From assembly GCA_900088475.1 (NCBI GenBank), contig FLMG01001570.1, forward strand, positions 186,001 to 250,000: a stretch of DNA of 64,000 nt, given 5' to 3'. Both the position numbers and the translations under genes were made by a program. This DNA is from Hyphochytrium catenoides (taxonomy: Eukaryota > Protista > Hyphochytriomycota). Below, piece by piece: positions 33,101-43,500 of the stretch. Within the stretch, counting starts at the first letter, position 1; each line of letters opens with the position of its first letter. Under the pieces are notes generated by a model. That model did no database searches. It was not told the origin of the DNA and was given only the letters and a program-made list of their open reading frames with translations.

Positions 33101-36067
33101 GGAGAGATACGAGGGCGCCCATCGCACAAAGAACTTCAGCAGCTCTTCGGCTAGCACAGGGCTGACCTGTACATCATCGGGCTTAGCATGGAACTTGCCA
33201 GAACCCTGATCAACGGTAAATAGTCGGCCTGATTCTTGATCGAGGATCTGCATTATGGTTGAACTGAGGCCAATCGTGGGGTCTTGGCTGGCTTGTTCTT
33301 GTGAGAAAGAGGAGGATAGAGCTAGCAGAGGCTCCGGTATCTGAGGCGTCTCGCCCTCAGCATCGTCCGCCAAGAGAAACCGAGAGAAGAGCACGAGGAA
33401 ACAAAGCTGCTCCAAGAGCTTGGCGAATTCTGGAAGATGACAAGAGGAAGGCAAGAGGAGTCATAAATGATTAGATCGTTTGTCAAGAGCAAAGTGAGCT
33501 ATGGAAGAGAGAGATATAGTGGTGTAGGCAGTGAGCGTGAGAGAAACACGTCAATAATGGTATAAGAACAAGAGGGAGAGACCATAATCAGCAGAAGGAA
33601 GACACACCAGGCACCATCGTGTTTGGTGGTAGCTTTCTAGACAGGTCCAACAACATCTGACGGTGCTCTTGCAGTTTCCCAGCGAGCAGAGACAGAGAGA
33701 AAGCTGGGACCATTCGGCCCAGTGCAGCAACTGCCCTCATCTGTTCCTCCTCTCCCGAACACCCTTCTCCTTCTCCCTCCTCCTCCTCTTCTTCTTCTTC
33801 CTCTTCTGTCAGTGACTCTATCTCCGCTGCCGCTAACTGAAGCTTCAGAGCAACGTAGCTTTCCAGGACGGGAGATACTGCAGCCGTGAGCACAGGGAAG
33901 AAGCTACTGAGCTCAGCAGACAGCGAAGCCAGCGTAGTGGGTAGGGAGGTTGGGAGCGATAGGATCTCAAGAACAGCTCTATGTGCTGCCATACTAGAGA
34001 AAGCATCTAGAAGCGAGCCCAGAGCTTCAAACATCCAGGAGCTTTCAGCCTGTGAGAGAATAAAAGAAGTGAGGTCGTGGCAGAAAGAGGCAGGCTTGAG
34101 TATGGTAGGAACATGACAAAGGGGGCCGATTCTCGACAAGCCAGAGTGAGAATTTGAGCAGACACATACCTCCTTTGCCCTGACCTCTCCCCTGCTAAGT
34201 GTCTCAGCTAATCCTTGCAGAAGTCGGCAGCATAGCGCTGCCAAGGTTTGCAGGACGTCTACTCGACCCGGGACTTTTAGAAGGAGTTCTAGCCCCAGAG
34301 CCTCAATTACCCGTCCGACAATCTAGCAGGCATTAGGTGAAATCGATGCGCTTAAGTGTGCAGGCAAGTGGAAGGCTGAAGGTAGAGCTGAGGTCCTTGA
34401 AAAGTACAAAGCAGAGAGAAGTTTATGATCCACAAGAGAATTGGCGTTAAGGGCAGACGGAAATAGACATAGAGAAACAAGAGCTAGCCACACGAGAAAG
34501 AAGATGAGTCAGACCTGACAAAACGAGATAACCTCAAGCTGCTTTTCCTCTTCGTCCCGTATGGCGTTTTGTGCCTCAGGGGACAGGAACTAACAAACGA
34601 GTAGTAAGCCCTTCGCTCTCGAGTGCTCGTCTCAAACACTATTCTCTTACGTTTTCACTCTCTTCATCCTTATGAATCCTCTCCTCTAACCCAGACGGCT
34701 CCTCTCGTAAGTTTGTTCTCTCAACCTTCACCCCAACCTGCATAGAATGTTTCTATAGGTTTGGCTCTATGTAACATAGAGACGAGCATTTCGTCTCCTC
34801 GCCTGCTCTATGAAGCTCGCCTGCTCTATGGACCTTCTTCAAGCCACATTATACTTTGCTGCTTCACTGTCCGACTGTAGGTCGTGTCCTCATCCTCTCC
34901 ACTATTGTTAACATCTGTTCCTTACCTGGAAAGCCTCAGAGAGAATGAAAGAATGGAACTGGACTGATTCATCCTCGTTCTTGAAGATGCTACCATGTAA
35001 GGAGGCGAGACGAAGGATGAGCTGGCGGAGGAGATGGGCGAGGGTTGGAAGAGAGAGGGTCCGGCACTGACGGTAGAGGTTGAAGGCAGACTGAAGAAAC
35101 TCAGGCTGGACGAGGAAATCCCGCCATGACGGGCCTGGGGCGATCAAGTTGCTCCTACAGGGAAAATTGTAAGAGCGAGTTAGAGAGATTGGCTTAGGGT
35201 TGGAGAAGAGAGCAGTACCGCGTTGCCGGGAAAATCCTAAGTGGAGTTTGTGGCTAGAAGGCGCTGATAGCTGTCCCAGGGTATCCTTCCCTACCTGTTC
35301 CCCTTCTTATCAGTGAGAAATTCGTCCGTGGACTCAGCACTGGATAGTGAAAAGTCCCAATCAAGGAGTTCAATGCAGAGGGAGAGGGATGCCGACAGAA
35401 GTGCGAAGACTGACGGCTCCCCATTAGGTAGCAAAAGGGCTGGCGCCTTGGAAATACCCGCAGCCTCCCTGAGAGCAGTCCTAGAGGTTGGATGAGAGAC
35501 AAGAGAGGAGAAGAACGGGAAGGCAATCTCAAAACACTGTCTTAGCCCGTATGATAGCAGGCCCTTCCTGGCAAGAGCGTGAAACTCGAGAGAAAGTGAC
35601 AGAGCACTGCTTTTGCTTGCAGAGAACTCCTGCACAAGGGCGGTTAAGAGCTTCAGCCCGACCAGCTGGTGGCGTCGGTCCATTGTTAGCAGGTTCCTCA
35701 GCTGCAGAAGCAGGAACTCCTTCTGGTCAGGTGGATCTTCCACCCATCCCCGCTTGCTAATGAGGGCAACGATCTGGATGAGCTGTGAGAGCACCACGGG
35801 TTCAAATGCCGAGAAGCGCTGGCAGCGATAGGTCCACGCAGCAGAAAGCGAGGTCGGGGAAGAGGTTGAGAGAGACAAGAGAAAGAGGAGGAATTGGAGG
35901 GGCGAGAGATCGAGACAGAGAGAGAAGGCAGACCATCCGAGATCAAGACGTGTGAGGAGGCAGTCATAGGTAGCCGAAGAGAATGACGAGTGTTAGACAA
36001 TCGGTGACGATAGTGGAAGATAAGGGAACGTGCCAGAAAATGAAGGTCAGACATAAGGCCCAGGATA

Positions 36068-36130
<63 letters not shown>

Positions 36131-36758
36131 CTAGTGACCGAGTCTCTCCTTCTGCACCCGCGGGTTCAGACCAACGGCAAGGGAAGAGCTACGTGGACAG
36201 ACTGACAGAGAGCGAAGGCAGGGCACAAGAAGGCTTAGCTCAAAGGGATGGAGGAGAGAGAAACCAGCAGGCCCCGCTGCGGCTGGAGACGACAACGTCA
36301 GGCCAGGAGAGAGAGGGCAGAACGAGAATGACTGGGAGGTGAGGAGGACAGAGAAAGACAGCAATGAGAAGCAGAAGGAATTTATAGCGATAGCGGTCGG
36401 CTGTTACGAAGCACAGAGAGAGAGAGACCAGAAGAGGAAAGCGGCGTTTAAGGCCTATGCACAGCACCTGCAGAACCAGATTGACCACTGAGGCTCTTAT
36501 GTTCTTCTGCTCCTCGACAGAAAGAGAAATCCATCGCCTCATAACCGCCTCTCGCAGAGCCAGTGCCGCTTGGAACTGCACGAAGGCATCGCCACTGTGC
36601 TGGAGGATGGAGAGCGAGTCGGATATGGCTGAAGGATTCTGACGGAAGGAGAGCAGCGCGTTCTCAGCCTCCGTCCGGGCGGAAGAGGACCCTCCGCCGG
36701 TCTGGAGCTGCCGGCAAGCCAGCTCAAACATGTGAAGGTTGTGCGGCTCTGTCGTCAT
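30164..36758 (-). CDS. XPO4: Exportin-4 (importin-beta family), ~14 exons
   Basis: N-terminus FELACRQLQ...ARTEAENALLSFRQ...FVQFQAALALREAVMRRW, IVALISKRGW, LVQEFSASKSSALSLSLEFH, GPSWRDFL, LLADDAEGETPQIP, LPLMTEELLAFPSLSKQFF, C-terminus FRKNMRSFVAEVRAFIRTK. Confidence 0.92.
36071..36128. repeat. Perfect (AG)29 microsatellite in XPO4 intron 1
   Basis: 58-bp uninterrupted dinucleotide run. Confidence 0.97.
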
Positions 36759-37266
36759 TTCTCTCCCGTTTCTTCTCTGTTTCTCTCTACTTCTTTTCCT
36801 TCTCTCTCTTCTACTCGTTAGCCCTCTGTGGCAACAGTTATGTCCGTAGAAGTGCACCGTGTTGGCGTCCTTGTCCCTCAGATGCTCTCATCCCTTTCAA
36901 CGCATCCTGAGGAGGACGCTCGGTCTGCTTCGATCTCTCACGGGGTCTGCACAGCCCTGCCCACTTCTCTGGACTGCCTCCCTGCCGGGCGATGCACCGC
37001 CTCTCTCTCTCTTTCTCTCTTGCCTTCGACTGCTCACTGTCTGAGCTGCTGCTCGCTGCCGAGCTTCTTCTGTCTCACTTTCTCTCTCTCCTTGGTCTCT
37101 CTCCTCGGTCTGCCCCTCTCCTCGCCGCCTCCACCCTTCCTTTGATGTGCTTCATTCTTAGAGGTGAAGGGCGCACCATTGGTTTTAAACGTGCGCTACT
37201 TATGAGCCTGAAGCGCACATAAAATACGAGGAATGTGAGAGGTCTTTTAGTGTATTAGAGCCTACG

Positions 37267-40200
37267 TCAACTGTGTGCACACCTAGCACCAGCCGTGCGC
37301 AATAGTTCGGCGGGGGAAACGGATTGAAGGCTTCTGATTCCTCCTGTTTCCCTCTCTTCCTCTTCCTCCGACCATTTCCCTCCCTCCTCCGCTCTCTCTC
37401 TCACTCCCACCTCGAAGTGCACTCTGGAGACACATCGCGCAGGCTTCCCAGCACGCTCCTGCTCTTTAGCCAGCAGTTGGAGCTTCTCCAAGCCCTCAAC
37501 TAAGCAGCAGAGGTCGGCCTTCTCCCGTTCCGTGGCCTCTTCTGGCGCCACCAAGAGCGCAATCATGTCACAGCCTAGCCTCTTGGCCACGTCCATAACG
37601 TCGACAAGAAGAGCGAAGGTCTCCTTTTTGCCATTTTCTTGTCGCGCAACCTTCTTGCCGTTGTTCCCACTTCCTGCTTCTTGCACGGGGACCAATGTCG
37701 ACACCCGCTGACTATCTTTGAAAAAAGGCGCAACCAGGACGGCGTGCTGACTGCCTCTCTCTCTCACGAATTGCTCGATAGTGTCGAGGGAACTGTATGG
37801 GCCTAGCAGAATAAGATCCTTCCTCTCCACCTGCTGATCACGCTCAGCGGAGAGAGGAGGTGCCGGCGCAGCGATCTGCATGTAAACCGTCTGCTTAACC
37901 TTATTCTTGCGATACTCTGGGAGCACATTAAGATGTCCATACGGACAATGGCGGCAAGCGTTCCCGCAGCACTTTCCTCGTCGTAAATGTGAGGCTTCCG
38001 TAAAGACTGTATATCCTGGTAGAAGCGTGTGAGCCAAGGAGTGGGAAGAGAAGAAAGGTGGGAAGGGTATGAACGGCGAAGACACCGTGTGAAGCAAGCT
38101 AGGGGCAGAGAGAAATTGGGGACACGCGGACCGGACAAAAACACAGGTAGAGAGAGACAGGATCTACCTGTGGCAGGGTCTGTATAGGTGCTTCTTCCCT
38201 GGGCACAAGCTGTTCGGTGGGCTTCTTCAATCTCAGTTAACGCTTTAACTTCCTCCTCTCTCCTCTTGGCCTGTTCATCCTGATCTTCCTTGTGTAAGAG
38301 GAGAGAAGAGACTTCTTCGAAGGGGAAGTCAGCTCTGTAGGCGTCTTCTCTTCCATGAAGCAGGCCTACAAGCCACTCGAAGGCATCTACTAGGCGCGGT
38401 CCCGGGCGATTGAACATCTACAAGCAGAACAAGTTTATTAGCCCCTAGGCAGAGGGAGACGAAGGTTGAGAGAACATAAGGGAGAAAGGCAGCGTTAGGC
38501 TCTGTAGACCATTATCTAGAGGTGCACTGGTGGCCTTGCAGAGAAAAAGATAAGGAACGTACCGCGTCGCCATCAACCAGGACCGCCTTACCATGCTGTA
38601 CGGCCCTCAGCTGCCTCCAAAGCGGAGAGTTCTGAGCCATGATTGGCATCATTTTCCTACCCATCTACGCGCAGCACAAGTATACGAGCAGAGGAAGTAA
38701 TACTTAGGCAGGGACAAAGATGGAGCCCATCTGGGCATGTTTTAGAGTGAGGAGGCTAGGTCAGGAGGAACCTCCTGGATCTCGGTGAAAGAGGAGACTG
38801 GAAGCAAAGCCATTATGGCATCTATGGTTGTGGTTATGGGACCCCTCTCCACACGCACCTCTAGGTCTAAGCCGCAGAAACAGAAGATGATGACCTCTGG
38901 ATCCAGCTCCTGCAGCTGCTGAAAGGGAACAGCAAATGACTTTCCAGCACCCCCTTTAGATGGCTCTGGTGCAGGATTGAGAGGATGGTTGCCACCTGCC
39001 CAATGGATCATCTGCGGCGTCCAATGTCCTAGCAAGTAGCGGTATCGCGGATGCAGTCAGGTGCAAAGCTGTCAAGTGGCTTTCATGTTATCTCTCTGAC
39101 GTAACGAGATGTGGGCCTAACCAATTCTGTGAGGAGGAGGACGAAGCCCCCGGATCTTGATAGTAAGGAAAGATAGGATCGCTAGAAACTTTTTATCGCG
39201 CGTAGCTAGATTGCTGTCTGAGGCCATCGCCGAGAGGAAGAGAAGCCCTAGTCTGTCTGTTGAGTTCTCTTCTTACCTCCAACGTATAGGGGATCTGGCC
39301 ATTCAACAAAGGCGACATCAATGGCTTGCGCGCCCGTTGGCACCTTATCTTTCGCGCGGTCTATTCTTTCCATGAGGCTGTCATAGACGCTCTGTGCCTG
39401 AGCCTCCAAGCCTACGCCGCGGCCAACAGTTAGGATATTGTCCAGGACATCTGGAAGGCTGAGGGGGTTAAGTGTGATAATCGTGGGCTTGTTCTCCTGG
39501 GAAAGGTGAGATGGGAAGTTGAGATCTAACGAGACAAGTCTGCTTCTAAGGATGTCCATTAGCAGTTAGGAGAAGGAGAAAGAAAGAGAGGAAAGGTAGA
39601 GATAGTACATAGTGATCCGCCAAAAACATGCGGCGTGGCTACAAGGCCACGAGATCAAAGCAGAGGAAATAGCTGTTAACCTCGATCTATGAGGCGGCCC
39701 TGGTGGTGAAAGAGAAGGCCGAGAAGCAAGAGGAAGGTGGTCTGAAGAGGCCTCACCATGGAAGCAGCCAGTCTCTCGACTGTCATGAGATCGATGGCAC
39801 AAACAGAACAGATATCCTGAGTCAGAATGACGTCTGGGCGGAGCTGCTTGATCAATTCCTCGTCCAACGCATAGAGAGACTTCCCTTCTCCTAAGGCTTC
39901 CGCCACTTGTCTGCCCCAAGGGATGTGAAGAGAGATGAATAAGAGAAAAGCGGTCATGGAATCTTGTCGTTAGGCTCATAGGCGAAGGCACAGATAGTAA
40001 GAAGACTATGCGAGTTCAACAAAGGGAGATGGCAGAGAAGGGAAGGCAGGAGGAGTCTTGGGCCTTTACCTCGAACCCCAGACGGAGAAAGGTTCCTTCT
40101 GTGCCAGAGTGATAGCAGAGATTAACAGACGGCAGAACAGCTTATGAAGCAGAGGCAGAAGGAGCGCAACGGCGCGCGCACAGGGAGAATAGACCAAGAC

Positions 40201-40400
40201 ATATCCGTCACTCGCCTGTTGACATCGGAAGGGGAAGTGAAGACCGTCTTCTGAGCTGTCACTATCGGGATCTGGTCCAATCCTGGCGGGTAATTATCCT
40301 CATGCGAGCGGCCCACAAGCAGCGACCGGCCGCCGATAGCGCAGAGAATCTCAGTGGCCGAGGGAAGGACGCTAATTACTCTCTGAACCGTCTTGGCCAT
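37267..40400 (-). CDS. Fusion protein: BtuF/YvrC-like helical-backbone binding domain + DUF5522 Cys-rich domain + putative degenerate DUF71/PP-loop domain, 7 exons
   Basis: RVISVLPSATEILCAIG...LVGRSHEDNYP, LYALDEELIKQLRPDVILTQDICSVCAID, EWPDPLYVGGHWTPQMI, CFCGLDL, WRQLRAVQHGKAVLVDGDA|MFNRPGPRLVDA; then EIEEAH..AC..GRSTYTDPATG|YTVFTEASHLRRGKCCGNACRHCPYGH. The third-domain assignment is weaker. Confidence 0.85.
39911..40215 (-). other. GC-AG intron (intron 1 of the BtuF-like fusion gene)
   Basis: Only donor AG|GCGAGT joined to acceptor GGCAG|A keeps the frame, giving DVNR|QVAEALG. Confidence 0.8.
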
Positions 40401-40591: not shown

Positions 40592-43500
40592 TCACTGAGT
40601 GCTTGCTCGTCGCTGCATCTCAAGGCCATGCATATTAGGCAGTTCTGCCAAGTGTTTCCTCTTCTTCTCCCTAGCCCGCTCGCTTGGTGCCTGGACCCTA
40701 GCGTGTGCTTCTGATGCTTCCCTGAACGAGGCCGACGCTGCTTCCATCAGCAGCACCTTCTGCTGTCTCTCATCCGCTGCAGGCACCAGCTTCAAAGGGT
40801 TCAAGGGGTTCAAGGACAGCGAGGCAGAGGACCAAAAGGGCAGCTTCTGATTCCTTCTTAGAGGACGGTAACAGCTACCTCTCACGCTTCTGTGCCGTTT
40901 GATCTCCATCAATCAGTGGCATCCCCAGGCAGATCCAGATCGGTCAGCATCATCTCTATGAAGCTCCTCCTCTGCGGAGGATGAAGCCCGGGGTGAAGCT
41001 CCATCAATAGAGCTTGTCAGTCTCACCAGTGCAGAGAGGAACATCCAGTCTCAGCACTATCACTTCGTTGCAAGCGTCATGGGTTCAGAGCAGAGGAGCA
41101 ACAAGGATTATTAGTTCATAGAGGGCCACACCATCCTGCACTAGTGAGTGCATGAGAGGCCGTAGAGTATAGCTCCATGATGTTATGATGGCCGCTTATA
41201 ATAGATACGATAGATAGGCCTGATGACACGCTGGCCAAGCGATTATACGCAGGATAATGAGGTTAGGGGAGTACATCCTTGCCAGCCCGTCTAATGCTCA
41301 TTCCAAGCCAATCTCTGCCCTTGTCCTTCAGCTGGTTACCAGGTCATGGTTCGACACTTACGCTCTTGTTCTGTGCTGCCGCCTCTGATCTGGCTGTTGG
41401 TTGCTCCTGTGACCGGAGTGGCTCATCGTGTCGTCAGGAGAAAAGATGCGGCAGCTACAACGCCAACTAAGTCGCGGGCATTATAAAAAACCGCTGAGTT
41501 ACTCTGCATCACGGACCGCAATCTCCTCCTCCGCACTTTTATTGCCCTGGGCGACGCCATCTGACTCTTCGGCTGCCAACTTGTCAGACTTTTGCTGCCC
41601 GCTGCTTATCCTATCATCCTTCTCCTCTCCAGAGTCATCCTCATCCTCGTCGTCATCTGAGAGACGCGCATCTTCAGCCATGGCGTGCAGTAAGTCCACA
41701 GAGCCAGCATCTGAACTCATGGACAGCATGCTGCCGCTTCCACGCCCTAAATCCCCATATCGCGGTCACGGCACTCAGTTTATGATGAAGAGGCAAAGAA
41801 ATTAGGAGCTCGCACCTCTACTGATGGGACTCTTCGGAGGAGAGGAGTTCGTCGCCTCTAGTTGGAGCCTCCAAGGGCTGCTCCGTGGTGAAGAGTTTCT
41901 ACCCGGTTTGTGCGACGAGCCTAGGAAACAAAGTCCGATGTTAGACGATTAAAAGAAAAGAGAGACTGGGCGTCGTGGGCCTTGCGTCAAACATACAGAT
42001 CAGAAGTCACAAGCAACGAAATCTGGGTGTGAGACCAACCATGTCTAAATGGACAGAAAGACAGCAAAGGACAGGAAGAGGCGCACAGAGCTGCTGAAGA
42101 ACTTCGGCTGGCTATAGATTATACGCATCCGGTCCTTTCTCATCTCTCAGAAGGAGACTAAGGGAGCAGCCATGGATGCTAGCGTCTCCTTCAGCAAGGT
42201 AGAGAAGGCCTGGTCGGGCAGAACGTCCTTCTTTGAGGCGGGGTGGTAGGAGCGTACCTATGCTAGCGATTCCTCCTGGGCGCGCAGTCGAGGATTTGGA
42301 AGGAGACGTCCGAAGATTGAAGGCGCGTGCGAAAATGCGACCTGGAGACTTTTGGGTTTTGGGGTGCTTCGAGACTGAAGGAGGTCTACCATCTACTTCT
42401 CCGCCCCAAGAGGAGCGCGGGCTGCTGTCGTGGCTGCTGACGGGGCTGTGGTAGGAGGCTGAAGAGGCCACGGAGTTTGCAACTTCTATCTGGAGCCGTC
42501 TGGTCAGCTCTGCCTGCAGCTCCAGAACCTGCTGTCTGTAGAAGATTGATGAGACGGTGGAGACAGATTGTGAGAAGCCCGTTAGTGGGTACATCAGGAG
42601 TGCCTAAGAATGTACCAGCCTCAAAGCTACGGCAGATAGAGACTGAGCTAAATGCACAAGAACAGAGCAGAGCCCGACGTGACAGTTGGCGCAGACATTT
42701 GTTGAAGCATCCTATCACTCCCTCCTTCTTGCTGCTCCGCACCTCAGACCTACCGCTCAAGCTTCAGTTGCGCCTGTAGATCTTTGACCAGCTGAGCCAG
42801 CTTGCCATGTTCAAGCTGCAGGTACATAGCAGACTGTCAGTTAGATATCCACTTTAAAATGTTAGCGTCTGTACGTTTTTTTAGCACTCGAGCCCTCAGG
42901 AAGGTCGACTAAAGACCACCTCCTCTCGTCTCCCAACTCTTTCGGGCATCAATGGAGACCTTCTTGAAGGGCTGGGTAAGCCATCCAAACAATGCCTGTC
43001 CGCCTCAGAAGATCCACTTTTCTGCAGTCCCTACCTTCCTCACTCCTGGCTGTTCCCTGAGCTTCTCCTGCAAGGAGCTAAGCTCCTGAAAGGCGTTGCT
43101 CAGGGTTTGCTTGGCCGCAGCTTGCTCCGTCTCCATCTTTTGGAGTTCCTGCTCTAAGAAGGTGTTCCGCCTTCGCACTTCCTCTTCCTGCGTACGCAGC
43201 GCAGCCTCGGCCTTCTACAGGAATGAAAGAAAATTGGATAGTGAAGAAATGAGAGTGTTGCACCTTCAAACAGCATAGACATTTCTTTGCAGATTTGAAC
43301 ATAAATCTGCGGATTCAGGTACGTTTTGAGATTACTGGCTCCGGCAAACAAAGAGGTTGTTATAAGAATGAGTTGGAAGTGAGAGGTGTCCATGGCACCT
43401 CCATAAGCTCTATCTTGGCCTGTAGCTTCTGGGCCCTCTTTAATGTGTGCTCATGCTCATCCTGCAGCTCATGCAGGGCCCACTCAGCTTTTTGCCATCC

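What the first reader, a model, noticed from the sequence alone, without database searches (positions are those of the whole stretch)
37267..40400. Signal-peptide-less BtuF-like / DUF5522 / DUF71-like triple fusion: candidate intracellular cobamide- or metal-handling module
Seen in sequence: the protein starts directly at the first beta-strand of a bacterial-type helical-backbone substrate-binding fold (MAKTVQRVISVLPSATE), so there is no signal peptide or lipobox. It carries GRSHE and TQDICSVC (CxxC), and is fused in frame to the CCxxxCxHCPY domain DUF5522 and a further ~200 aa. Established knowledge: this fold includes the B12-binding protein BtuF, and comparative genomics has predicted a B12-salvage role for a bacterial subgroup of the DUF71/COG2102 PP-loop family. 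Inference: a bacterial gene neighbourhood has been fused into a single cytosolic eukaryotic protein with six introns. With no ABC permease in the window, it may act as a cofactor chaperone, sensor or remodelling scaffold rather than in uptake, with many candidate Cys/His ligands for Zn or Fe-S.
Basis: partly seen in the sequence, partly recalled or inferred. Interest (0 to 1): 0.8.

Follow-up and report, generated by a model that had tools for sequence, protein, structure and literature searches.

The report
Cytosolic B12-binding fusion protein, decayed tail
This is a real seven-exon gene for a signal-peptide-less BtuF-like binding protein fused to the cysteine-rich DUF5522 domain; it descends from a bacterial vitamin-B12-regulated operon, and its third, enzyme-like part has decayed in this organism.

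Summary
A minus-strand gene (40400..37267) has seven exons and six introns and encodes 609 aa. It starts at the first strand of a helical-backbone binding fold with no signal peptide. It carries GRSHE and a CxxC, then DUF5522 (split by intron 6), then a 221-aa tail.

Relatives show a widespread, uncharacterised family:
- DUF5522+DUF71 occurs in 254 bacterial species and in many protists.
- True BtuF-like+DUF5522+DUF71 fusions occur in Phytophthora and in metagenomic eukaryotes.

In 23 of 80 bacterial loci, a signal-peptide-less, CxxC-bearing BtuF-like gene abuts DUF5522-DUF71. The window's domain matches these end to end (34% identity, E 1e-57). Where a DUF6580 membrane protein precedes that gene, a cobalamin riboswitch precedes the unit in 8 of 8 testable loci. 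In diatoms, DUF5522 is fused to the B12 adenosyltransferase MMAB (best 120 clusters).

The B12 link and the operon-to-fusion origin are therefore supported. The "DUF71-like" label is not met in this gene:
- The PP-loop is lost and the C-terminal half is absent.
- Profile similarity is not significant.
- The closest relative keeps an intact DUF71.

Most likely this is a cytosolic corrinoid-binding or hand-off protein, not an enzyme. No RNA run was listed. The same stretch was noted once before in this scan (s1-331119).

The parts
37267..40400 (-). Whole coding region: 7 exons (40400-40216, 39910-39757, 39496-39277, 39028-38859, 38664-38563, 38417-38168, 38015-37267 including the stop), 609 aa
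   Evidence: Splice model. Junctions agree with homologue alignments. Intron 1 is GC-AG.
38355..40400 (-). BtuF-like / Peripla_BP_2 helical-backbone binding domain without signal peptide (residues 1-298, exons 1-6)
   Evidence: Pfam fragment on exon 3. BLASTP is end to end, 34% identity and E 1e-57, to bacterial partners that pass the Pfam cut-off themselves (46.5 bits). The family profile hits heme- and B12-binding SBPs in the PDB.
40299..40313 (-). GRSHE motif. The family consensus is G-x-S-H-[ES]-C; the Cys is Asp in this gene.
   Evidence: G.SH[ES]C is present in 22 of 24 bacterial partners.
39799..39822 (-). TQDICSVC: the family hallmark [ST]QxxCx[VL]C (CxxC)
   Evidence: Present in 23 of 24 bacterial partners and in the eukaryotic fusions.
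37924..38231 (-). DUF5522 (PF17653), residues 340-391, split by intron 6 (38167-38016). The CCGNACRHCPY motif is at 37971-37939.
   Evidence: Pfam 59.3 bits, E 3.8e-16 on exon 7, with profile positions 1-19 on exon 6. 79% identical to the closest relative.
37270..37932 (-). 221-aa tail at the position where relatives carry DUF71. Probably a decayed, truncated PP-loop domain: LILLGPYSS at 37815-37789 stands in place of the SGGKDS loop.
   Evidence: No Pfam, atlas or 1.84-billion-protein hit. HMM not significant. Smith-Waterman against the relative's DUF71 gives p about 0.012. An alignment-guided AlphaFold2 model is Rossmann-like at pLDDT 69, with only weak PP-loop fold hits.

Best explanation
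The gene encodes a cytosolic corrinoid (vitamin B12 family) binding and hand-off protein.

An N-terminal BtuF-like two-lobed binding domain lacks any export signal and carries a conserved His/CxxC site. It is fused to DUF5522, a small Cys4/His module.

The architecture is a eukaryotic fusion of a bacterial B12-regulated salvage unit. That unit is: putative DUF6580 transporter, then a cytoplasmic BtuF-like protein, then a DUF5522-DUF71 PP-loop enzyme.

In this organism the third module has lost its ATP-binding PP-loop and its C-terminal half. The protein therefore most likely only binds and presents or delivers the cofactor, or an analogue of it, to other B12-handling proteins. It probably does not catalyse an ATP-dependent step.

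Shown here: the gene model, the domain identities, the family, the bacterial operon, the riboswitch association, the DUF5522-MMAB fusions, and the loss of the DUF71 motifs.

Inferred: corrinoid as the ligand, cytosolic location, the hand-off role, and thiol or metal chemistry at the CxxC and DUF5522 sites.
For: Gene and domains.

Family:
- DUF5522+DUF71 proteins occur in haptophytes, Tribonema, diatoms, oomycetes, chytrids and bacteria.
- Pfam confirms Peripla_BP_2+DUF5522+Diphthami_syn_2 in P0029, P0060 and Phytophthora kernoviae P0090.

Bacterial context:
- 254 GTDB species encode a DUF5522-DUF71 relative.
- In 23 of 80 loci a Peripla_BP_2 gene lies directly upstream on the same strand.
- These start MR[IV]VSLLPSATD, without a signal peptide. 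They align to window residues 5-298 at 34% identity, E 1e-57.
- Cobalamin riboswitch RF00174 (70-98 bits) lies directly upstream of DUF6580 and the BtuF-like gene in 8 of 8 loci that have upstream DNA. Six of these run on into DUF5522-DUF71.

Independent fusion: DUF5522+Cob_adeno_trans appears in all of the best 120 clusters from diatoms.

Literature: 75 of 102 bacterial DUF71-B12 genes are adjacent to btuCDF (PMC3541065).

Structure-level relatives: the nearest solved proteins are tetrapyrrole-binding SBPs, including BtuF.

Loss of DUF71 is lineage-specific: the relative L001 keeps SGGKDS, FGDLH and GESGEFHT, while the window does not.

Context (unchecked notes of this scan): the same genome is reported to hold cobS, MMAB, MetH, a CblC fusion, CobB/CbiA and a class II RNR.
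Against: - No binding or expression data exist, and no RNA run was listed.
- The best PDB sequence match of the family profile is a heme-binding protein (2r7a, 8e-8), ahead of BtuF (2e-5 to 9e-4).
- No curated BtuF model reaches its cut-off.
- 20 bacterial loci, including the Nitrospinota-type loci that carry the BtuF-like/DUF5522-DUF71 pair, show no riboswitch within 3 kb.
- Most DUF5522-DUF71 loci have no obvious B12 neighbour.
- The decayed tail could mean the whole gene is losing function.
- The third Cys of the bacterial SHxC motif is Asp in this gene.
Confidence: 0.6

Rival explanations
1. The protein handles another tetrapyrrole or metal chelate (heme, iron-siderophore) or is an Fe-S/Zn protein unrelated to B12. 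Under this reading the B12 associations hold only for some bacterial members.
For: The top PDB profile hits are heme-binding ShuT (2r7a) and IsdE. JGI names a relative 'iron complex transport substrate-binding protein'. A ferritin gene follows the operon in L082. The DUF5522 Cys4/His motif resembles a metal site. 20 scanned loci, including the Nitrospinota-type pair loci, lack riboswitches.
Against: All 8 testable DUF6580/BtuF-like units sit behind cobalamin riboswitches. DUF5522 is fused to cobalamin adenosyltransferase in at least 120 diatom clusters. The DUF71-B12 literature points the same way. No Fur- or iron-type element or gene recurs nearby.
Confidence: 0.12
2. The gene is on its way to becoming a pseudogene. 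After loss of the DUF71 enzyme function the whole fusion is under relaxed selection and has no role.
For: The tail has lost every DUF71 motif and its C-terminal half. The tail has no homologue anywhere. The third Cys of SHxC is replaced. No RNA evidence exists.
Against: There are seven intact exons with usable splice sites and no frame break. The BtuF-like hallmarks (EW.DP..GHW, CG.D, RPGPR, CxxC) are all kept. DUF5522 is 79% identical to the nearest relative. The 221-codon tail is still open.
Confidence: 0.12
3. The gene model is incomplete or wrong at an end. An unseen upstream exon could splice into the AG four bases before the ATG and add a targeting peptide, making the protein organellar or secreted. 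Alternatively, the tail could be removed or replaced by alternative splicing.
For: A possible acceptor (ccaccag|gaag) lies just upstream of the ATG at 40400, and about 1.1 kb separates it from the end of the upstream gene near 41500. A GTGAGA donor-like site lies inside the tail. No transcripts were available.
Against: The relative L001, P0122 and all bacterial partners start at the same place. No signal-like ORF lies upstream. No DUF71 C-terminal half is encoded anywhere in the window.
Confidence: 0.1
4. The tail is still an active but extremely divergent nucleotide-binding domain, so the protein remains a three-part remodelling enzyme.
For: The alignment-guided model gives a Rossmann-like beta-alpha-beta core at pLDDT 75-91, and the weak fold hits are all PP-loop enzymes. 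The same order of secondary structure appears without an alignment. A collinear local match to the relative's DUF71 has p about 0.012.
Against: The PP-loop SGGKDS, the TTF/HQ and FGDLH motifs and the whole GExGEFHT half are gone. The model's fold is driven by the alignment supplied. The single-sequence model has pLDDT 36.
Confidence: 0.05

Closest known systems
BtuF, the periplasmic vitamin B12-binding protein of the BtuCDF ABC importer (PDB 1n2z/1n4a)
   Same: Same helical-backbone, two-lobed Peripla_BP_2 fold class. The family profile detects BtuF chains at E 2e-5 to 9e-4. The bacterial members are B12-riboswitch regulated.
   Different: No signal peptide or lipobox. No adjacent BtuC/D permease genes in the operons seen. 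Conserved SHxC and CxxC motifs. The curated BtuF model is far below its cut-off (18-20 bits against 234). Heme-binding SBPs score slightly better.
DUF71-B12 subgroup of the DUF71/COG2102 PP-loop ATPases (de Crecy-Lagard et al. 2012, PMC3541065)
   Same: Relatives of this gene carry a Diphthami_syn_2 domain after DUF5522. They lie next to BtuF-like genes and behind cobalamin riboswitches, which matches the published clustering with B12 transport genes.
   Different: The window's own tail fails every sequence test for the family. The published work searched here does not mention the DUF5522 N-terminal module or a cytoplasmic BtuF-like partner. Which DUF71 subgroup the fusion family belongs to was not resolved: PAB0415_fam and Dph6 both score below cut-off.
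Eukaryotic triple fusions BtuF-like+DUF5522+DUF71 (e.g. Phytophthora kernoviae P0090; metagenomic P0029, P0060), auto-annotated 'diphthine--ammonia ligase'
   Same: Same domain order, same hallmark motifs and the same signal-peptide-less start.
   Different: They retain an intact PP-loop and a complete DUF71. Identity to the window is only 30-40%. None has been characterised.
CBA1, cobalamin acquisition protein 1 of algae (PMC10828217)
   Same: A eukaryotic protein with structural similarity to BtuF that is needed for B12 handling.
   Different: CBA1 has a signal peptide, a C-terminal transmembrane helix and an ER/plasma-membrane location, and it acts in uptake. This protein has none of these and carries DUF5522.
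DUF5522 / vertebrate C1orf53; diatom MMAB with an N-terminal DUF5522
   Same: Same 48-residue domain with CCGxxC[RK]HCP[YF] (117 of 121 proteins). It is fused to cobalamin adenosyltransferase in diatoms.
   Different: Those proteins lack the BtuF-like domain. No function is known. No paper in the library holds 'DUF5522', or 'C1orf53' together with 'cobalamin'.

Membership tests
Peripla_BP_2 / helical-backbone (class III) substrate-binding fold | Sequence match to PF01497 over both lobes | tested here: met
   The window exon 3 alone gives 23.1 bits (E 5.6e-5; cut-off 27.5). The spliced protein could not be submitted as one query. Residues 5-298 align end to end (E 1e-57) to bacterial proteins that pass the cut-off at 46.5 bits.
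BtuF (periplasmic B12-binding protein of BtuCDF) | Export signal and periplasmic location | tested here: not met
   The protein starts 7 residues before the first strand, and so do its relatives. An unrelated canonical SBP in L058 shows a lipobox, for contrast.
BtuF (periplasmic B12-binding protein of BtuCDF) | Match to the curated BtuF equivalog NF002894 | tested here: not met
   Close bacterial relatives score 18-20 bits against a cut-off of 234. The eukaryotic relative L001 has no NCBIfam hit.
BtuF (periplasmic B12-binding protein of BtuCDF) | Binds cobalamin | not testable with these tools
   Only indirect evidence: cobalamin riboswitches upstream of the bacterial partners.
DUF5522 (PF17653) | Pfam match above the gathering score, including CCxxxCxHCPY | tested here: met
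   59.3 bits against 25 on exon 7, with profile positions 1-19 on exon 6. The motif is at 37971-37939.
DUF71 / Diphthami_syn_2 (PF01902) PP-loop ATPase | PP-loop SGGxDS | tested here: not met
   LGPYSS stands at the aligned position. Relatives have SGGKDS, invariant in 16 of 16 bacterial members.
DUF71 / Diphthami_syn_2 (PF01902) PP-loop ATPase | Significant profile match | tested here: not met
   No Pfam hit. The family HMM scores -0.6 bits, reached by 211 of 2000 shuffles. There were 0 hits in 1.84 billion representatives.
DUF71 / Diphthami_syn_2 (PF01902) PP-loop ATPase | C-terminal half with FGDLH and GExGEFHT | tested here: not met
   Absent from the tail and from all six frames of the window. 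Present in the closest relative L001.
DUF71 / Diphthami_syn_2 (PF01902) PP-loop ATPase | Rossmann-like HUP fold | tested here: inconclusive
   The alignment-guided AlphaFold2 model has pLDDT 69 and a beta-alpha-beta core. Foldseek hits to PP-loop enzymes are only E 4e-3 with TM 0.23-0.28. The single-sequence model has pLDDT 36.
Bacterial B12-riboswitch operon DUF6580 / cytoplasmic BtuF-like / DUF5522-DUF71 (described here) | Hallmark motifs [ST]QxxCx[VL]C and a signal-less start, linked to DUF5522 | tested here: met
   TQDICSVC and the MAKTVQRVISVLPSATE start are present, and DUF5522 is fused in frame.
CBA1 (algal cobalamin acquisition protein 1) | Signal peptide plus C-terminal transmembrane helix; sequence homology | not tested
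   The features are described in PMC10828217. The window protein has no N-terminal hydrophobic signal. Homology could not be tested because no CBA1 sequence was held.

The most novel reading that the evidence does not exclude
DUF5522, including vertebrate C1orf53, is an unrecognised component of intracellular vitamin B12 trafficking. It would be a small Cys4/His module that ligates the corrinoid cobalt through a thiolate, or carries a metal or Fe-S centre. It would pass cofactor or electrons to partner enzymes: adenosyltransferase MMAB in diatoms, the DUF71-B12 enzyme in bacteria and protists.

The cytoplasmic CxxC-bearing BtuF-like protein would be its dedicated corrinoid carrier.

The intact triple fusions could then be the enzyme that algae and oomycetes use for a still-unassigned corrinoid salvage or remodelling step.
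Probability: 0.4. Interest if true: 0.85.

Novelty: new variant of a known kind. Interest (0 to 1): 0.68.

Why it matters
Three independent gene fusions tie the uncharacterised DUF5522 domain to vitamin B12 handling: with a BtuF-like binder, with the DUF71-B12 PP-loop enzyme, and with the adenosyltransferase MMAB. A set of cobalamin riboswitches adds a fourth line. The human member of the family is C1orf53.

No paper in the searchable library makes this link. It turns an orphan human protein and a 2012 comparative-genomics prediction (DUF71-B12) into directly testable hypotheses.

It also defines a cytoplasmic branch of the B12/heme-binding protein fold. That branch could explain how salvaged corrinoids are carried inside bacterial and protist cells.

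The copy in this window matters mainly as a natural experiment. The binder and DUF5522 are kept while the enzyme module has decayed, which argues that the first two parts have a role of their own.

Tried and rejected
- RNA evidence: the look-up of sequencing runs listed no run.
- Whole spliced protein as one query: it has no reference, so exons were searched by reference and the spliced model was analysed only in local scripts.
- Tail homology: the big search with the tail gave 0 hits and the atlas search gave no usable hit.
- BLASTP of the tail against the DUF71 parts of P0001 and P0003 was not significant.
- The long exon-4 isoform (639 aa) was rejected because it inserts 29 aa that no homologue has.
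- A hidden downstream exon for the rest of DUF71 was rejected: tblastn with 107 DUF71 parts found nothing in any frame of the window.
- DUF6580 as BtuM or CbrT: no PDB sequence hit; only automatic names such as 'putative transport protein' or 'CbiM family'.
- Organism identification by exact look-up of three ORFs failed: they are not in the collection.
- Wider bacterial neighbourhoods gave only scattered hints. Methylmalonyl-CoA mutase lies 3 kb away in L006 and a CarH-like regulator 4.5 kb away in L008. No B12 gene recurred in the flanks examined.
- Phmmer of the closest eukaryotic BtuF-like ORF against the PDB gave nothing; only the family profile reached solved structures.
Full report
**1. 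Observation**

The finding's coordinates are the exact limits of a minus-strand coding region. Reading the reverse complement and joining ORF pieces at splice sites gives seven exons:
- 40400-40216
- 39910-39757
- 39496-39277
- 39028-38859
- 38664-38563
- 38417-38168
- 38015-37267 (stop included)

There are six introns of 145-305 nt, and the product is 609 aa. Intron 1 uses a GC donor (AG|GCGAGT); the others are GT-AG.

Every junction lies in an ungapped, conserved column of alignments with homologues. A weaker alternative donor for exon 4 would add 29 residues that no homologue has, so it is rejected.

The sequence features are as follows:
- The protein begins MAKTVQRVISVLPSATE.
- GRSHE and TQDICSVC are present.
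- Pfam finds DUF5522 split across intron 6 (59.3 bits on exon 7 alone, cut-off 25).
- Pfam also finds a Peripla_BP_2 fragment on exon 3.
- A 221-codon open tail follows.

No RNA run could be listed, so the model rests on homology and splice signals. The neighbours are ordinary eukaryotic genes. An importin-beta-like gene starts about 400 nt downstream, and PRKCSH- and Prp31-like ORFs lie elsewhere in the window.

**2. The family**

A word search with exon 7 hit only DUF5522 proteins. Two kinds were informative:
- Protist transcripts in which DUF5522 is followed by a DUF71/Diphthami_syn_2 PP-loop domain with an intact SGGKDS.
- Diatom proteins in which DUF5522 precedes a cobalamin adenosyltransferase domain.

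A second search, with one of the protist proteins, found 145 clusters. DUF5522-DUF71 occurs in haptophytes, Tribonema, diatoms, Phytophthora, chytrids and many bacterial MAGs. Longer proteins also carry Peripla_BP_2.

Pfam confirms the full three-domain architecture in P0029, P0060 and Phytophthora kernoviae P0090. The window protein aligns with these over the binding domain and DUF5522 at 30-40% identity.

The closest DNA relatives are metagenomic scaffolds (L001-L003):
- The binding domain is 44-49% identical and sits mostly in one exon.
- The start is the same, without a signal peptide.
- DUF5522 is 79% identical.
- An intact DUF71 follows, with SGGKDS, FGDLHLEDIRAWRE and GESGEFHT.

**3. 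Bacterial origin and the B12 link**

A scan of one genome per bacterial species found 254 species with a DUF5522-DUF71 relative. Eighty loci were fetched.

In 23 of these, a Peripla_BP_2 gene lies immediately upstream on the same strand (Pfam). These proteins have four properties:
- They start MR[IV]VSLLPSATD or similar, with no signal peptide. A canonical binding protein in L058 shows a lipobox, for contrast.
- They carry [ST]QxxCx[VL]C in 23 of 24 cases.
- They carry G.SH[ES]C in 22 of 24 cases.
- They align to window residues 5-298 end to end at 34% identity, E about 1e-57.

Nine loci also have a DUF6580 membrane protein in front of the BtuF-like gene. Automatic names for it are 'putative transport protein' or 'CbiM family'.

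In all eight of these that retain upstream DNA, a cobalamin riboswitch (RF00174, 70-98 bits) lies directly before DUF6580. In six, the unit runs straight into DUF5522-DUF71. No riboswitch was found in 20 other loci, which include the Nitrospinota-type pair loci.

An independent line comes from diatoms. A search with the diatom fusion returned 120 best clusters that all carry both DUF5522 and Cob_adeno_trans. They come from Cylindrotheca, Nitzschia, Seminavis and Bacillariaceae.

The published analysis of DUF71 reported 75 of 102 bacterial DUF71-B12 genes next to btuCDF (PMC3541065).

A profile of the fusion family's binding domain reaches only tetrapyrrole-type binding proteins in the PDB. Heme-binding ShuT and IsdE score E 8e-8 and 6e-6. 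BtuF chains score 2e-5 to 9e-4. No curated NCBIfam model reaches its cut-off.

**4. The tail**

The tail has no Pfam hit, no atlas hit and no hit among 1.84 billion representative proteins.

In family alignments it sits exactly where DUF71 sits. However, LGPYSS replaces SGGKDS, VLVAPF replaces VLLTTF, and HFEVG replaces FGDLH. Everything from there to GExGEFHT is missing. No such sequence is encoded in any frame of the window.

Two statistical tests were run:
- A DUF71-core HMM scores -0.6 bits, reached by 211 of 2000 shuffles. This is not significant.
- A local alignment to the spliced DUF71 of the closest relative is collinear and marginal: score 44, reached by 24 of 2000 shuffles.

Structure prediction was not decisive:
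- An AlphaFold2 model guided by the family alignment gives a Rossmann-like core with a disordered insert (pLDDT 69).
- Its Foldseek hits are all PP-loop enzymes but weak (E 4e-3 at best, TM 0.23-0.28).
- Without an alignment the model is unreliable (pLDDT 36), although the order of strands and helices is the same.

My reading is that the tail is a decayed, truncated DUF71. The loss is specific to this lineage, and the tail cannot bind ATP in the family's way.

**5. Mechanism**

Shown:
- a signal-less BtuF-like domain with a conserved His/CxxC site, fused to DUF5522;
- descent from a bacterial unit that is B12-riboswitch controlled in one clade;
- recurrent fusion of DUF5522 to B12 enzymes;
- loss of the PP-loop module in this gene.

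Inferred:
- the protein binds a corrinoid in the cytosol and presents or passes it on;
- the cysteines serve as cobalt or metal ligands.

Earlier notes of this scan report cobS, MMAB, MetH, a CblC fusion, CobB/CbiA and a B12-dependent ribonucleotide reductase elsewhere in the same genome, and describe the organism as an oomycete-like protist. I did not check these. If they are true, the organism has partners for such a carrier.

Rivals considered:
- a heme or iron role;
- a gene in decay;
- an incomplete gene model, given a possible acceptor four bases before the ATG;
- a still-active divergent enzyme.

**6. Comparison and novelty**

The protein is not a BtuF: it has no export signal and falls below the curated cut-off. 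In this copy it is not a DUF71 member either.

It does belong to an uncharacterised fusion family that databases label 'diphthine--ammonia ligase', 'ABC subfamily B' or 'iron complex substrate-binding protein'.

A 2011 diatom survey lists an 'Uncharacterized protein C1orf53' classed as ABC, of prokaryotic origin and without a targeting signal. This is probably the same fusion (PMC3237598).

CBA1, the known BtuF-like algal B12 uptake protein, differs in having a signal peptide and a membrane anchor (PMC10828217).

No paper in the library holds 'DUF5522' or 'DUF6580', or 'C1orf53' together with 'cobalamin'.

Algal remodelling of B12 analogues still lacks an assigned enzyme for removing the lower ligand in several lineages (bioRxiv 10.64898/2026.08.07.738727). 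The intact triple fusions are candidates for that gap, but this was not tested.

**7. Verdict**

The main value lies in the family-level link between DUF5522 (C1orf53), a cytoplasmic BtuF-like carrier and B12.

Noticed in passing
P0006, P0128-P0246 (diatom proteins): In pennate diatoms (Cylindrotheca, Nitzschia, Seminavis, Bacillariaceae) the cobalamin adenosyltransferase MMAB carries an N-terminal DUF5522 domain. All 120 best clusters have both Pfam domains.
   Followed up: partly
L040 1482-3807; L082 1444-3831; L065 1435-3783; L064, L067, L039, L042, L055: Gammaproteobacteria-type MAGs, some labelled Erythrobacter, have this order: cobalamin riboswitch, DUF6580 membrane protein, signal-less CxxC BtuF-like protein, DUF5522-DUF71. 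DUF6580 looks like an uncharacterised B12-regulated transporter. It has no PDB sequence hit.
   Followed up: partly
L006 7001-14810: A DUF5522-DUF71 gene is followed at once by a small Cys_rich_CWC protein. Two methylmalonyl-CoA mutase genes lie 3 kb downstream on the same strand.
   Followed up: no
window 40215-39911: Intron 1 of the gene is a GC-AG intron (AG|GCGAGT ... GGGGCAG|A). The junction is supported by ungapped homology to relatives.
   Followed up: yes
window 38858-38772: An in-frame read-through of the exon 4 donor up to a weak GTTCCT donor would add 29 residues. No homologue has them. This could be a minor isoform or intron retention.
   Followed up: partly
window 36240-36857 (minus strand): The downstream neighbour is an importin-beta/exportin-like gene (IBN_N, E 9e-10; Xpo1-like further on at 35294-35878). 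It starts only about 400 nt after the stop of the studied gene.
   Followed up: no
window 41500-41740 (minus strand): The upstream gene on the same strand ends near 41500 with a very acidic Asp/Glu-rich C-terminus. The ORF at 42112-42594 has no Pfam hit.
   Followed up: no
L001 4716-8258 (ENA metagenome scaffold, GROS21 samples): The closest relative of the window gene sits on metagenomic scaffolds of an unidentified eukaryote. It has fewer introns and an intact DUF71. Prokaryote-style gene calling split it into four 'genes'.
   Followed up: partly
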